Both the position numbers and the translations under genes were made by a program. A DNA stretch of 63,285 bases, counting the filler, from Octopus bimaculoides (taxonomy: Eukaryota), in assembly GCF_001194135.2 (NCBI RefSeq). It is 6 parts of 6 records of this genome, joined end to end, with 100 filler letters (N's around TTAATTAATTAA, not from the genome) between each part and the next. Parts side by side here need not be neighbours in the genome. Positions count along the whole stretch, not along the records: positions 54,879 to 60,960 come from NW_026416016.1; 5 more parts are not named here. One strand, 5' to 3'. The notes under the pieces are model-generated. The model ran no database searches, was not told the origin of the DNA, and saw nothing but the letters and a program-made list of their open reading frames with translations. Below are positions 54,779-60,960 of the stretch, one piece after another (within the stretch, counting starts at the first letter, position 1; each line of letters begins with the position of its first letter).

Positions 54779-55467
54779 NNNNNNNNNNNNNNNNNNNNNN
54801 NNNNNNNNNNNNNNNNNNNNNNTTAATTAATTAANNNNNNNNNNNNNNNNNNNNNNNNNNNNNNNNNNNNNNNNNNNNATTGTTTTCTGAATCATAATTT
54901 GAGTTTTTATTTTATCATATTGAATTCGCAAAGTACTGTTCGAAAGATCTAAAAACAAAATAAAACAGAAAACATATCTATTGATGGACGAGGTATGTGA
55001 AAGTTTAAAAAGCTGTTATTTAAGCTGACTCATAAGCTGTTTTCAAAAAATTAAAAATACATATAAAAACAAAATAAAATATAAATCTGTGGAGTCTATA
55101 TCCAACAAATTCGTCCAATTGATCCAAGTTTTCAATTTTTTATAATCACTAATTGACGATACAGAGAAATCAATATTTTGCCTGGATCCTGCACTTTTCA
55201 CTTTATGTGTAAAAACAAACTGTGTAAAACAGTTTGTATGCATATATATGTGTGTATATGTGTGTGTGTACAGTAATGCCATACTTTACGAGGACCTCTT
55301 ACGACACCCAGGTTTTACGAGTGTTATTCTATAATAAATATAAAAAGGATAAGCAACCATTTTGTGGAGAAAATGACGGCATAAAATTTCAATGTCTTAG
55401 CTTGCGCGTACACTTTGTTGAAGGAGACGTTTATAAGCTAATTCTTTATGCTACGTATTTTATGTTA

Positions 55468-56292
55468 CATGAAATAATGCGAGCAAGAGAAATAATATTC
55501 TTAAGATTATAAACCTGGAAAATTACAGGACAAGTTATTACACTTGGAAAAGTTTAGGACAACTTATTACATCTGGTGAAGTGCAGAAAAGAAAACTTTT
55601 ACTTAAGATATTGCAGCTAAGGATAAAATTTCAAATGAAATATTTAGATTTAGAAAATATTAGCTTTTATTAAAACTAAAAATTTTATTACAAGTTATTA
55701 CTTTTATTTGTTATTACTTGTTAAAAATTAAAAAAATAACTCAAAATATTTTTGCACTTTAAAAAAAATTCATTTTTTAATTATCAATAATTAAAAATTT
55801 GAAAATAAGTTATAAAAATAATAGTAGTACATAATTAGTTAGTACAATAAATAGAATAATACCAAAATTAGTTATACATCACAGTAAAATTTACCTAAAA
55901 CAAGAAATTCACAATAAAATGTGCTTGAGTTGGCAAGTCTTCACAATTTTACTCTTGAGCCCATGCCTATCTTTTACATAATTAATTTGCATAAAACTTT
56001 AGCTATATTGATACTTTTGGCTCACATTTTTTAATTATTCAAGTGTGTCAATATTTTAACAAAATGATGGTACCTTTTTAAATTACAATGTTACTTTGTA
56101 AATTAAATTCAAATAATTTTAGATATTCAAATTTTATCCTTAGCTGCAATATTTTAAGCAAATTTTTTTGGTTCTGTACTTTATCAGATGTAATTAGTTT
56201 TCCTGAACTTTTCCAAGTGTCATAACTTGTCCTGTAATTTTCCGGGTTTATAATCTTAAGAATATTATTTCCCTTGCTCGCATTTTCCCATG
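55468..56292. mobile_element. MITE-like element with about 175-bp TIRs, CATG termini and TA flanks
   Basis: CATG..ATGCGAGCAAG.GAAATAATATTCTTAAGATTATAAACC...GCAGCTAAGGATAAAATTT is inverted at about 56120-56292 around an AT-rich interior. Confidence 0.75.
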
Positions 56293-57306
56293 TAATCCAT
56301 GTTTTTTCCAGGTTATGTTATTATACTAATTAATAATGTGTCAAATGTGTCAATTAGCGGTGTCGTTGATAAATTTTCCTTGCCTCAATGACGCCGGTGA
56401 CATATATTAAAAGTCCCCTTTTAAAACTATATTCATAAAAGAATATAGAACTATATTATCACCCTCAAATTTGAGCAACAGACACTCATAACATTTTTCT
56501 TTTAAAACTTCATTGCATGAGATTGATTCCATAAAATTCCTTAAATTGAGTTCTATCATTTCAGCTTAATTAAAGTACGGTTTGTCTTTAAAATAAAAAA
56601 AAAGTTATACTTAAATCCAGTTTTTTTGCCTTACTTATATTTTTTCATGATATTTTACCTCACAACTATTTTGATACGATTTTTTGTTGCATGCGACCAA
56701 ACTATGAAATTCTTCATGCTTTCCTCTATCATTGAAGCTATGATAAATATATTTTGCTTTTAAAATAAAAAAGTTATTTAGATCTAAACTTGACTGGTGG
56801 CGTTACTTACTCCCCTATAATGTTGCTACAAATTTTGATATAAACTTTTTTCCACAGGATCAAATCTCAATTTTTTATGCCAAAATGTAGCTAAGTACCA
56901 GTCCTCTTCAAAAATGTTAACAGTTTTCTATTTGGTTAAGAACTGAATTATCGACAAGCTCTGAAAGATGCTGCATGTGAGTAAATTGCGGCCTTAAGAA
57001 TATTATTCAACTACTACCGTAGTTTAATGATTGTGTGGTGGAAGGGTAATTGACCGGAAGAGAGAAAGAGAGACGTCGCTAGAGGACCGGTAGTGGACGA
57101 GATGACATCACGTCGGCGAGCAACAGGGCACCTGTCTCTCTCCTTTTAGGATGTCTGTGGAAGAGGCAAGTCGTGCTGCTATCAGTATTGCGAAGTGATC
57201 CAATCTAGCGAGTGATCGGTAGAGTCAACACGTGGTAACAACTGAATGATATGGCCACGGTTTTCGTACTTTTAAACTACTCGGAATTTTTTAAACTCAC
57301 CCAATA

Positions 57307-58235
57307 TATCTAAACGAAAGTGTACAACGAACACTGACGGGAACAAAACGAAGCGATAAGCCATCACTTTAGAAACGAAGTATGAAATTGTGAAAGTGCG
57401 TTATGGTGGTACAACTGTGAAAAACATTTGTGACAAAATTTCACTTAACTCGTCAACTGTCTGCACAATTCTCAAAGAAAAACAAAAATATTTATTTCAA
57501 GTGTGAAATATGCAGCCTTTGAAATCAACCCGGGCTCGTAAAAAGGAAGTTGGAAGCATTATTCCTGAAATGGAATAAACTTTTCAATGCATTGGTAAGT
57601 GACAAAACACAACGCATGCATATGAATGTTAAGCAAGCGTCGATTTGTAGCAAAGCAGTGTCTCTTTTCAGTATGCTTAAAGAAATGAAAGGTAACACAA
57701 ACGAACCTTTTGTTGCAAGCAGATGATAGTTTGATCAATTTAAAAATCGACGTGGGTGGCATTCCGTCAAAGTACAAGAAGAAGCATCAAGAGCCGATGT
57801 CGATGCAGCAAAAACAAAAAAAAAATCCAGAAACATTGGCAGAAATAATTGNNNNNNNNNNNNNNNNNNNNNNNNNNNNNNNNNNNNNNNNNNNNNNNNN
57901 NNNNNNNNNNNNNNNNNNNNNNNNNNNNNNNNNNNNNNNNNNNNNNNNNNNNNNNNNNNNNNNNNNNNNNNNNNNNNNNNNNNNNNNNNNNNNNNNNNNN
58001 NNNNNNNNNNNNNNNNNNNNNNNNNNNNNNNNNNNNNAAAAAAAAAAAAAATAAAAAAATGCGCTGCCTAGTTTTAAGGTTGCAAAAGATCAACTGACAT
58101 TATTATTCGGAGGAAATGAATCTGGGGATTTAAAAATAAAACCGATGCTAGTTTATCGAGTGGAAAATCCAAGGTCACTTAAAGACATCTTTAAAAAGTA
58201 CTTTTCTAGTCATATGGAAATCTAATGAAAAAAGC
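57307..58235 (+). mobile_element. Tigger/pogo transposase relic (CENP-B-type HTH + DDE start) spanning a gap
   Basis: KR*AITLETKYEIV..LNSSTVCTILKEK, FDQFKNR and AKDQLTLLFGGNESGDLKIKPMLVYRVENPRSLK. Confidence 0.9.
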
Positions 58236-59164
58236 TTCCGTTGTATAATATGTTACATTTTGGAGATCTCAACATCCTAATAAAGGGTAAGACATGTCAA
58301 TAACATGATACTGAGGATATACTAAGCTAATGGAGTGGTGGGTAGAGATTTCTGTTGCAACATTGTGAGAGGTATTTCGGTTGTGGCTGATTGACGAAGT
58401 CACAGTGAATCGAGGCATTCCACACACAAGCTAGGATTAAACTGATATACTAAAGGCCAATGCTTCTCCCCAGTTTTACTTCTAGCCTCACAATTACATA
58501 TTTGTTATGGGATCATTTAGTCACGTCAATTTTGCCACTCTAACCAACATACACGTTTTATAAAATTTGAGGGTACTTTTTAAGAAGTTAGTGTGGATCT
58601 GGCTTGAGTGGAAGGTTTCCTCAGAATTTTGATCTACATCTCCCATACAACGTATTCAGCGTAAGCTGATTACTGGCCACTACCAGCACTTATGTGGCAA
58701 AATAAAATGCTGACGTGATGTTCAAATATGCTCGGGTGATACTCTCATCTACGCGGCCATGACAAAGCTGTTCAATACAAACGTACAAGTCAGAAACTTA
58801 CGGAAGGTGAAAGAATATGTGTTAGATGGTTGTGTCATCCTGCAGGTATCTGTGAGCAGTGGTTCCTACACGACCGTAACACTGTAGAGTTTAAACAATA
58901 TAATCGGTAGAGTTTAAACGGTCAGCCTGAACATTCAGGAACTCTTTTGTCTCAGACCATTTCTAAATAATACTGATCACCGTGCACAACATTTCTTAGT
59001 TTATGTCCATATAGATGTCCGTTCAAAATCATACATAGACCCCTTCAGAATACGCGTGTTGAATTATGCCGACCGCATTGTTCAAATGGTGAAACTCAGT
59101 GAATGCTCGGCAGTATTCTAGGTGCCAAATGTTTGACATTAGTTAAAAGCTGTACTTAACAGTA

Positions 59165-59372
59165 ATGGTTTCTAATATAGGCACTGGCTCCGAAATTTGC
59201 AGGGAGGAGAACCGTAGGTTATATCGACACCAGTATTCTGACGGGTACTTTATTTTTTCAACACTGAAAGAATGAAATACAAAGTTAACTTCGGTGAGAT
59301 TTGAACTCAAAACATAAAGAGCCGAAACAAATACACAACGATTTTCTCGGACCCGTCAACGATTCCGTCAAT
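59165..59372 (-). mobile_element. SINE family A (diverged)
   Basis: Reverse complement of family A. Confidence 0.7.
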
Positions 59373-59980
59373 TAAAACAACATATGAATATACTGCCTTG
59401 TATGGTTATATTGAAAAAAAAAGAGAGTATTGAAGCTCTATGTAAATGTTATTTCTACATAGATGCTACGTTAGCGTATGCACGCGTGAATTGTGTAACC
59501 TGATTATACATACAACAATATAATGAAGTGTTGTACTTGGAGATGGTCATATTTTGCCAATTAAACACACACTATATATTTGGACTTCACTTCTGCTTTA
59601 TTATTGTTTTAGTTTCTTTGTCGTCAAAGTTCTTTCGTCACACACCCTGGGACATTTTCGACGACTCTCTGTCCAACGTGTCTCCTCTTGTTCTGCTTAT
59701 TCCATCAATAAAGCTGAAGTGAAGACCGAATATATAGTACCTGCTCTTAAATGGCAAAATATACCCACCCCCAAGTATAACTGTATCTCTTTCAACACAG
59801 GATTTTGCATATAAAATTTTGCAAAACAAATACATAACCTATAATTTAGATTTTTAAGGAAACTTTTTAACGTATAGAATAGTTTATATATAACGAGATT
59901 ATATGCTAATTATTCTTAACTACTTCAGATAATTGTGATACGATACTAATTTAACTGTTGTTTCTTTTTTTGTTTTCTAG

Positions 59981-60073
59981 GTAAGGCCATCTTTCTTGTC
60001 TGAAATGATATACAGCGCAATTATGTTTTAGCTGAAAGAACGTACAAAGCATATGATGCCACACGCAGAGTCA
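59981..60073 (+). other. Candidate host-gene exon (93 nt): RS-exon or 5' leader/first coding exon
   Basis: Branch-point-like TACTAAT at 59944-59950, a long U-rich tract, TAG acceptor at 59978-59980, and CA|GTAAGT donor at 60074. Stops occur in all three frames. ATGATG at 60053 gives MMPHAES in phase 0. Confidence 0.6.
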
Positions 60074-60807
60074 GTAAGTGCTTTGACAGTTAATTGCATT
60101 TTTATCGTAAAATGAGTATCCTGTTCTTCTTGCAGCTTTTGAAAACCCTATGATAGTGAAGAATTTCTTGTTTACATATGCACACACATACACATACGCA
60201 CGCACGGACACAAATACTAACGTAACACAACGTAACGTAACATAACATAATGCTAATTACATGCGATTCAAGAAGGCTTTGGAAAACTTGTATTATTGCG
60301 AAAATATAAATGACATACATCAACACTGAATAGTTTGCAGCACATAGTAGAAAAGTTCTAAATTCAAAAGGACTGATGTTGTTTTTCCTCAGTTAGTGTT
60401 ATCCAAAACTGTGATTCCAACAAAATATATAAATTCATCACGGACAAGAAGTACCCTCAGTCAAGTCAGAATATACAATTTGTTAAACTCACAGTTATGT
60501 GTATGCAGGATTAAAAAAAAAAATTACCCGTCAGAACTTACAAAGTGTCTTAAGAGCCGAGAGTTTCGTATATGCCACTTGATAAGTAGCATATACAAAA
60601 CACTCGGACCCTGAGTAATTCTATGACTTCAGCTGATTAATATGTAAGTATGTATATATATACGTATGTGTGTATGTATGTATGTATGTATGTATGTATG
60701 TATGTATGAATGTATGTATATATGTATATATATATATGTACATATATATGTATATACATACATATATATGCATACACTCACACACATATATATACATACA
60801 TGCATAC

Positions 60808-60842
<35 letters not shown>

Positions 60843-60929
60843 CATACATATGCATATATATGTTTGTATATATATATATGTACATATGTATATATATGTG
60901 TATATATCTATATGTATATATATGTATAT

Positions 60930-60960
<31 letters not shown>

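What the first reader, a model, noticed from the sequence alone, without database searches (positions are those of the whole stretch)
59944..60079. Candidate recursive splice site (AG|GTAAG ratchet point) with a stop-containing RS-exon
Seen: TACTAAT branch-like motif about 30 nt upstream, then TGTTGTTTCTTTTTTTGTTTTCTAG, immediately followed by GTAAGG, so splicing to this acceptor would regenerate a 5' splice site. A second strong donor CA|GTAAGT lies 93 nt downstream, and the exon has stops in all three frames (TAA 59982, TGA 60001, TAG 60029). It was the only such strong + strand site I found in an otherwise exon-free 63 kb. Established: recursive splicing in long Drosophila and vertebrate introns uses this 3'ss-5'ss fusion, typically with a downstream cryptic RS-exon that often carries premature stops. 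Inference: this may be stepwise splicing of a giant cephalopod intron, which I have not seen described in this group. GTAAGG is an imperfect donor, so chance coincidence in an ordinary exon is a real possibility.
Basis: partly seen in the sequence, partly recalled or inferred. Interest (0 to 1): 0.7.

Follow-up and report, generated by a model that had tools for sequence, protein, structure and literature searches.

The report
Unverified recursive-splice-like motif in repeat-rich DNA
The sequence does contain a textbook "acceptor fused to donor" splice motif followed by a short stop-filled pseudo-exon, which is what a recursive splice site looks like. No available data show that this DNA is transcribed, lies in a long intron or is conserved, so it stays a good-looking motif hit and not a demonstrated case.

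Summary
The described motif is present at the stated coordinates. TACTAAT sits at 59944-59950, with its branch A 31 nt from the AG. The tract before the AG has 18 of 20 pyrimidines, TT at -5/-6 and no intervening AG. AG|GTAAGG lies at 59980|59981. A 93-nt unit follows with stops in all three frames, then TCA|GTAAGT at 60074.

It is the only AGGTAAG on either strand of the 6-kb piece. It is by far the best AG|GT junction there: 22.9 bits against 13.3 for the next. Markov simulation gives 0.02-0.05 sites of this quality per Mb per strand. That is rare in one window, but means hundreds per Gb-sized genome.

The claimed context fails. The "exon-free 63 kb" is an artefact of joined pieces. The real piece is 6,082 bases, rich in transposon remains, has an assembly gap and shows no recognisable host exon.

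The downstream donor adds little, because six pseudo-exon pairs of similar quality occur in the same 6 kb.

Strand of transcription, intron length, junction or lariat reads and conservation could not be tested; no related sequence was retrievable.

My estimates are: functional ratchet point about 0.4, unused chance motif about 0.35, ordinary non-coding or poison exon about 0.2. If real, it would be a new member of a known kind. Interest is low to moderate.

The parts
59944..59950 (+). Branch-point-like motif TACTAAT (branch A at 59949, 31 nt upstream of the G of the acceptor AG)
   Evidence: Read directly. TACTAAY occurs 4 times in 11.8 kb of both strands, and CTRAY occurs at 3.6 per kb.
59956..59980 (+). 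Polypyrimidine tract plus acceptor: TGTTGTTTCTTTTTTTGTTTTCTAG, with 18 of 20 pyrimidines before the AG, TT at -5/-6 and no AG since the branch motif
   Evidence: The acceptor weight-matrix score is 12.6 bits, rank 3 of 575 AGs on both strands.
59981..59986 (+). GTAAGG directly after the acceptor AG. This is the putative ratchet point, a 5' splice site that would be regenerated once an upstream exon is joined at 59981.
   Evidence: It is the only AGGTAAG in the piece on either strand. The donor ranks 1 of 695 (10.2 bits in genomic context, 11.7-12.9 bits with an AAG or CAG exon end). Seven of 11 positions are complementary to the U1 5' end.
59981..60073 (+). 93-nt putative cryptic RS-exon, non-coding, with stops in all three frames (59982, 60001, 60029)
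   Evidence: It has no similarity to anything else in the piece and no protein relatives for overlapping ORFs.
60074..60079 (+). Downstream donor TCA|GTAAGT, the putative RS-exon 5' splice site
   Evidence: The intronic hexamer is perfect, but the exonic side is poor. The weight-matrix score is 5.0 bits, rank 44 of 695, and 6 of 11 positions pair with U1.

Best explanation
The stretch 59944-60079 on the + strand is a complete exon-definition unit whose first bases are themselves a 5' splice site. It consists of a branch motif, pyrimidine tract, AG|GTAAGG, 93 non-coding nucleotides and GTAAGT.

If the + strand is transcribed as part of an intron, the expected behaviour is that of a ratchet point with a cryptic RS-exon:
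1. U2AF/U2 at the acceptor and U1 at 60074 define the 93-nt exon.
2. The upstream exon is ligated to 59981.
3. This rebuilds a strong donor (exon end|GTAAGG) at the junction.
4. That donor out-competes the weaker TCA|GTAAGT donor.
5. The 93-nt unit is removed with the downstream intron segment and leaves no trace in mRNA. If it were retained, its stops would make the transcript a nonsense-mediated-decay target.

Shown: the sequence anatomy and its rarity. Inferred: transcription, strand, intron context and every splicing step.
For: - All motif elements are present and correctly spaced.
- The fused junction is an outlier within the piece: 22.9 bits against 13.3 for the next of 23 AG|GT junctions. 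The donor ranks 1/695 and the acceptor 3/575.
- The simulated chance rate is 0.02-0.05 per Mb per strand.
- TT at -5/-6 is present, as in 99.5% of Drosophila ratchet points (10.1101/006163).
- Cryptic RS-exons are described as short, poorly conserved, generally out of frame or stop-containing, and skipped when the ratchet donor is the stronger one (PMC8605326, PMC6224609). Here the reconstituted donor scores 11.7-12.9 bits against 5.0 for the downstream donor.
- Ratchet-type motifs are enriched 4- to 22-fold on the sense strand of large introns in all five invertebrates tested, including a sea urchin (PMC2773006). A mollusc using them is therefore plausible.
Against: - There is no evidence that the + strand is transcribed, that the site lies in an intron at all, or that the intron is long. 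The piece is 6 kb with no host exon.
- No orthologue could be retrieved, so conservation is untested.
- The published real-genome background for ratchet-like motifs is about 0.1 per 100 kb per strand. A Gb-sized genome therefore holds hundreds to thousands by chance.
- The downstream donor is ordinary by weight matrix, and six comparable pseudo-exon pairs occur in the same 6 kb.
- GTAAGG departs from consensus at +6, and T instead of C stands at -3.
- The exon length of 93 is a multiple of 3, whereas cryptic RS-exons tend to be out of frame.
- No mollusc has been examined for this mechanism.
Confidence: 0.4

Rival explanations
1. The motif is a chance co-occurrence, an unused pseudo-exon. A T-rich tract happens to precede AGGTAAG in non-transcribed, antisense or simply ignored DNA and has no role in splicing. 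The T-rich tract may be the reverse complement of an A-rich retroposon tail.
For: - The real-genome background of ratchet-like motifs is about 0.07-0.12 per 100 kb on antisense strands in 13 animals. My simulations imply roughly 100-270 sites of this quality per 2.7 Gb, and more in a real genome with T-rich tracts.
- The site was picked after the fact from a scan of many windows.
- The surroundings are repeat debris: a SINE-like element, two foldback elements, a transposase remnant and microsatellites.
- Pseudo-exon pairs are common in the piece.
- The reverse complement of the tract is A-rich (AGAAAACAAAAAAAGAAACAACA).
Against: - The junction is far better than any other in the piece and is expected only 0.001-0.003 times per 61 kb strand.
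- A near-consensus branch motif at the right distance, an AG-free zone and TT at -5/-6 all coincide.
- The 410 nt around the site match nothing else in the piece, so no repeat origin is shown.
Confidence: 0.35
2. The unit 59981-60073 is an ordinary internal exon that is included in mature RNA: a UTR exon, a long non-coding RNA exon or a regulated poison exon. It merely happens to begin with GTAAG. Any recursive use of that start would be minor or repressed, as for the 'annotated RS-exons' of vertebrates.
For: - It has a strong acceptor, a branch motif and a downstream GTAAGT at an ordinary exon length.
- Hundreds of annotated exons in deuterostomes begin with a 5'ss-like motif and are nevertheless included (PMC6224609).
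- The length of 93 is a multiple of three.
Against: - Stops in all three frames exclude a coding cassette exon.
- The donor at 60074 is much weaker than the donor that would be reconstituted at 59981. Under the competition model this predicts skipping.
- No transcript or protein evidence exists.
Confidence: 0.2
3. TAG|GTAAGG is an ordinary 5' splice site that ends a non-coding exon lying upstream of 59980, and the pyrimidine tract is exonic by accident.
For: In its genomic context the donor at 59981 is the best-scoring donor of the piece (10.2 bits).
Against: - All three frames ending at 59978-59980 close within 0-30 nt, so it is not a coding exon.
- The 60 nt upstream look like a branch site and pyrimidine tract, not exon sequence.
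- No acceptor of any quality stands upstream within an exon's reach: the nearest + strand AG in the 15 best-scoring (>= 7.2 bits) is at 58845, more than 1.1 kb away.
Confidence: 0.05

Closest known systems
Drosophila intronic ratchet points with cryptic RS-exons (Ubx, kuz, Bx; Hatton 1998, Burnette 2005, Duff 2015, Joseph 2018, Joseph & Lai 2021)
   Same: - It has juxtaposed (Y)nAG|GTAAG with a pronounced pyrimidine tract and TT at -5/-6.
- A short non-coding downstream exon ends in a second donor.
- The ratchet donor is predicted to be stronger than the RS-exon donor, which would lead to skipping.
   Different: - Fly RS-exons average about 50 nt and tend to be out of frame; this one is 93 nt, a multiple of 3.
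- +6 is G instead of T and -3 is T instead of C.
- Fly sites are defined by junction and lariat reads, deep conservation and residence in long introns, none of which is available here.
Vertebrate recursive splicing via RS-exons in long neuronal genes (Sibley 2015; Blazquez 2018)
   Same: The exon-definition logic is the same: the outcome is set by competition between the reconstituted RS-5'ss and the downstream 5'ss, and a stop-containing RS-exon would trigger decay if included.
   Different: - Vertebrate sites show no sequence-level enrichment in large introns.
- They were found through saw-tooth RNA-seq in introns of more than 100 kb.
- EJC-dependent repression is unknown in molluscs.
- No expression data exist for this site.
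Intronic pseudo-exons or decoy exons
   Same: It is an acceptor/donor pair at exon-like spacing in non-coding, repeat-rich sequence. Six such pairs occur in this 6-kb piece.
   Different: Ordinary pseudo-exons do not begin with a near-consensus donor directly fused to the acceptor. This junction scores about 10 bits above any other AG|GT in the piece.

Membership tests
Recursive splice site (ratchet point) with RS-exon | Juxtaposed 3' and 5' splice-site consensus, (Y)nNYAG|GTRAGT | tested here: met
   The sequence is TTTTTTTGTTTTCTAG|GTAAGG at 59980|59981. The acceptor scores 12.6 bits (rank 3/575) and the donor 10.2 bits (rank 1/695). It is the best of 23 AG|GT junctions by 9.6 bits.
Recursive splice site (ratchet point) with RS-exon | Prominent pyrimidine tract with TT at -5/-6 (99.5% of fly ratchet points), and a branch site with an AG-free zone | tested here: met
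   There are 18 of 20 pyrimidines, TT at -6/-5, TACTAAT with its branch A 31 nt upstream, and no AG in between.
Recursive splice site (ratchet point) with RS-exon | Downstream 5' splice site that defines a short cryptic exon | tested here: inconclusive
   GTAAGT lies 93 nt downstream. Its weight-matrix score is only 5.0 bits (rank 44/695), and donors at least that strong occur about 3.7 per kb. Comparable acceptor/donor pairs occur six times in the piece.
Recursive splice site (ratchet point) with RS-exon | Reconstituted RS-5'ss stronger than the RS-exon donor (for a cryptic, always-skipped RS-exon) | tested here: inconclusive
   The score is 11.7-12.9 bits if the upstream exon ends in AAG or CAG, against 5.0 bits for the donor at 60074.
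Recursive splice site (ratchet point) with RS-exon | RS-exon is non-coding, out of frame or stop-containing | tested here: met
   Stops stand in all three frames at 59982, 60001 and 60029. However, the length of 93 is divisible by 3.
Recursive splice site (ratchet point) with RS-exon | Lies on the sense strand inside a long intron of an expressed gene | not testable with these tools
The piece is 6,082 bases with no host exon. No gene model or longer contig was retrievable.
Recursive splice site (ratchet point) with RS-exon | Splicing intermediates: upstream-exon-to-59981 junction reads, lariats with a 5' end at 59981, saw-tooth nascent RNA | not testable with these tools
Recursive splice site (ratchet point) with RS-exon | AG|GT core conserved above its flanks in related species | not testable with these tools
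   All attempts found nothing: exact ORF look-ups, a protein search with ORFs around the site, two metagenome scans and one viral-contig scan.
Ordinary cassette, poison or UTR exon | Presence of 59981-60073 in mature transcripts | not testable with these tools
   No transcript data are available. A coding cassette exon is excluded by stops in all frames.

The most novel reading that the evidence does not exclude
This is a working zero-nucleotide ratchet point with a cryptic RS-exon in a cephalopod intron. It would be the first recursive splice site in a mollusc, or in any lophotrochozoan. Together with the motif enrichment reported in insects and a sea urchin, it would imply that motif-driven recursive splicing of long introns is ancestral to bilaterians and was kept as cephalopod introns expanded.
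Probability: 0.35. Interest if true: 0.45.

Novelty: new member of a known kind. Interest (0 to 1): 0.25.

Why it matters
Recursive splicing has been demonstrated experimentally in Drosophila and vertebrates. Motif enrichment has been reported in a few other invertebrates, but no mollusc has been examined; the paper library holds nothing on it.

Cephalopods have large, repeat-rich genomes and unusual RNA biology. Knowing whether they remove long introns stepwise would help decide whether ratchet points are an ancestral bilaterian device or a lineage-specific one.

One motif hit cannot settle that. Its value is as a concrete, cheap-to-test candidate and as a prompt for the genome-wide sense/antisense enrichment test, which would answer the question directly.

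Tried and rejected
1. I looked up ten ORFs around the site by exact sequence, hoping to reach orthologous or transcript contigs. None is in the collection.
2. I ran a protein search with a concatenation of the ORFs flanking and overlapping the site. Of 231 word-sharing candidates, none was significant.
3. I ran exact DNA scans for the junction and for the downstream donor in JGI metagenome contigs and for the junction in viral contigs. All found nothing. These collections are not expected to hold animal DNA.
4. I tried to identify the organism through the transposase remnant. The only hit was a lizard Tigger1-like protein at 32% identity, which is uninformative.
5. I searched the literature for a remembered SINE fragment. 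It gave no hits, so the octopus attribution rests only on my memory of that repeat plus an alignment.
6. Rfam gave only sub-threshold 'miRNA' matches in the TA/TG microsatellite at 60640-60960, which I rejected as low-complexity artefacts. Nothing matched at the site.
7. ARAGORN found no tRNA.
8. A self-comparison of 59750-60160 against the piece found no repeat copy of the site. The idea that the pyrimidine tract is an antisense retroposon tail could therefore be neither supported nor excluded.
9. A six-frame Pfam scan of the GC-richer block 58260-59420 gave no family, so no host exon was found there.
10. The CG-rich first-intron feature of a 2026 preprint cannot be applied without the upstream 5' splice site.

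Full report
**What was checked.** Only positions 54879-60960 of the window are real sequence: 6,082 bases, including a 186-N assembly gap at 57852-58037.

**The observation.** Direct reading and a script confirm each element at the stated place.
- TACTAAT lies at 59944-59950. Its branch adenosine at 59949 is 31 nt from the G of the acceptor AG.
- The interval between them (TTTAACTGTTGTTTCTTTTTTTGTTTTCT) contains no AG.
- Eighteen of the 20 bases before the AG are pyrimidines, with TT at -6/-5 and T at -3.
- AG at 59979-59980 is followed at once by GTAAGG at 59981-59986.
- Ninety-three nucleotides later stands TCA|GTAAGT, with its GT at 60074.
- The 93-nt unit has stops in all three + strand frames: 59982 TAA, 60001 TGA and 60029 TAG.

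**Is it more than chance?**

Within the piece, yes.
- AGGTAAG occurs once on the two strands together.
- I used a simple log-odds matrix built from textbook metazoan splice-site frequencies. These are my own knowledge and approximate, not MaxEntScan.
- With it, the donor at 59981 is the best of 695 GTs and the acceptor at 59980 the third best of 575 AGs.
- The fused junction scores 22.9 bits against 13.3 for the next best of 23 AG|GT junctions.
- I simulated 100 Mb from first- and third-order Markov models trained on the piece. AGGTAAG with an acceptor at least as good as observed occurs 0.02-0.05 times per Mb per strand. That is about 0.001-0.003 per 61-kb strand, but of the order of 100-270 per 2.7-Gb genome.

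Real genomes are richer in T tracts than a Markov chain.
- Shepard et al. measured 0.07-0.12 ratchet-like motifs per 100 kb on the antisense strand of large introns in thirteen animals (PMC2773006).
- So the motif is rare locally and unremarkable genome-wide. It was also selected after the fact from a large scan.

The supporting features differ in weight.
- The branch motif is worth something. CTRAY occurs 3.6 times per kb, about 0.12 per 35-nt window, and TACTAAY is ten times rarer.
- The downstream donor is worth little. The GTAAGT hexamer is expected about 0.1 times in 220 nt. By weight matrix the site ranks only 44th because its exonic side is TCA.
- Six acceptor/donor pairs of equal or better thresholds occur in these 6 kb. 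That is the familiar abundance of pseudo-exons.

**Surroundings.** The piece is mostly repeat debris and shows no host exon.
- A foldback element has 170-nt arms at 88% complementarity (55465-55634 and 56126-56295).
- A decayed pogo/Tigger-type transposase lies on the + strand at about 57290-58230, broken by stops and by the N gap. Its Pfam matches are CENP-B_N (E 0.033) and DDE_1 (22.2 bits against a cut-off of 22). Its only database relative is a lizard Tigger1-like protein at 32% identity.
- About 100 nt on the minus strand (59214-59313) align to what I remember as the abundant octopus tRNA-derived SINE, with score 44 against a shuffle maximum of 16. This is memory, not a database result.
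- A second palindromic element has 75-nt arms (59530-59602 and 59707-59781).
- Microsatellites lie at 60160-60260 and 60640-60960.
- The 410 nt around the candidate (59750-60160) match nothing else in the piece.
- No ORF of 40 codons or more looks coding, and Rfam finds nothing at the site.
- The cephalopod origin is therefore plausible but unverified.

**Attempts to bring in related sequence.** All failed.
- Exact look-ups of ten ORFs found nothing.
- A protein search with the ORFs flanking and overlapping the site found nothing significant.
- Exact DNA scans of metagenome and viral contigs found nothing.
- Strand of transcription, intron length, splicing intermediates and conservation are the features that define recursive splicing. 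None could be examined.

**How it would work.** On sequence alone the unit matches the current model of recursive splicing (PMC8605326, PMC6224609).
- The RS-exon is defined by its acceptor and downstream donor.
- The upstream exon is joined to its first base.
- This rebuilds a 5' splice site at the junction.
- Competition between that site and the RS-exon donor decides whether the RS-exon is skipped or included.

Here the rebuilt donor would score 11.7-12.9 bits with a typical AAG or CAG exon end. It would pair with U1 at up to eight contiguous positions. The donor at 60074 scores 5.0 bits with six paired positions. The prediction is therefore a cryptic, always-skipped RS-exon of the Drosophila type. 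If it were included, its stops would make the transcript a decay target.

TT at -5/-6 is found in 99.5% of fly ratchet points and is present here. Departures from the fly consensus are G at +6, T at -3 and a length (93) that is a multiple of three.

**Weighing.**
- Ratchet-type motifs are enriched 4- to 22-fold on the sense strand of large introns in fly, mosquito, bee, beetle and sea urchin, but not in vertebrates. No mollusc was studied.
- If cephalopods resemble the other invertebrates, a junction of this quality with a good branch site is more likely real than not, provided it lies on the sense strand of a long intron.
- If it lies elsewhere, it is noise.
- These rough priors are inference, not measurement. 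Combining them, I put a functional ratchet point at about 0.4, an unused chance motif at about 0.35, an ordinary included non-coding or poison exon at about 0.2, and an ordinary donor ending an upstream non-coding exon at about 0.05.

**Comparison and novelty.** The closest known systems are Drosophila intronic ratchet points with cryptic RS-exons and vertebrate RS-exons. The candidate meets the sequence criteria of that family, but the functional and evolutionary criteria are untested, so membership is not established.

The paper library holds no report of recursive splicing in cephalopods or molluscs. There were no hits for octopus or mollusc, and the single cephalopod co-occurrence is in a reference list.

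If confirmed, this would be a new member of a known kind and a modest taxonomic extension. The mechanism itself would not be new.

**Verdict.**
- Observation: partly confirmed. The motif is exact and locally exceptional, but the claimed context is invalid.
- Interpretation: cannot tell.
- Interest: 0.25.

Noticed in passing
window 55465-56295: This is a foldback or MITE-like element: two 170-nt arms at 88% complementarity, separated by 491 nt of AT-rich sequence. If transcribed, it would form a long double-stranded RNA.
   Followed up: partly
window 57290-58230 (+ strand), with the N gap at 57852-58037: This is a decayed pogo/Tigger-type DNA transposon remnant. CENP-B_N-like, HTH-like and DDE_1-like segments lie in different frames and contain stops. 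The only database relative is a lizard Tigger1-like protein at 32% identity. The 186-N run flanked by poly-A marks a short-read scaffold gap.
   Followed up: partly
window 59214-59313 (minus strand): A SINE-like segment aligns to a fragment I remember as the abundant octopus tRNA-derived SINE, at about 75% identity with CpG-decay-type differences. ARAGORN calls no tRNA. This is the only hint of an octopus origin, and it rests on memory.
   Followed up: partly
window 59530-59781: A second palindromic MITE-like element has 75-nt arms at 80% identity (59530-59602 and 59707-59781). It lies 200 nt upstream of the candidate splice site.
   Followed up: no
window 60640-60960 and 60160-60260: TATG/TA and CA/AACGT microsatellites lie here. 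The first gives many sub-threshold Rfam matches to mir-297, mir-466, mir-3149 and similar families on both strands. These are low-complexity artefacts, not miRNA genes.
   Followed up: yes
window 58290-59130: This block has higher G+C (0.41 against about 0.30 elsewhere). It has no long ORF and no Pfam match in any of six frames. It is unidentified and may be the non-coding part of another mobile element.
   Followed up: partly
window 57149 (+), 57334 (-), 58485 (+): Other exon-like acceptor/donor pairs of similar weight-matrix quality lie inside the transposon remnants. None has an open frame, apart from a 33-nt unit on the minus strand. They illustrate how common pseudo-exons are in this sequence.
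   Followed up: no
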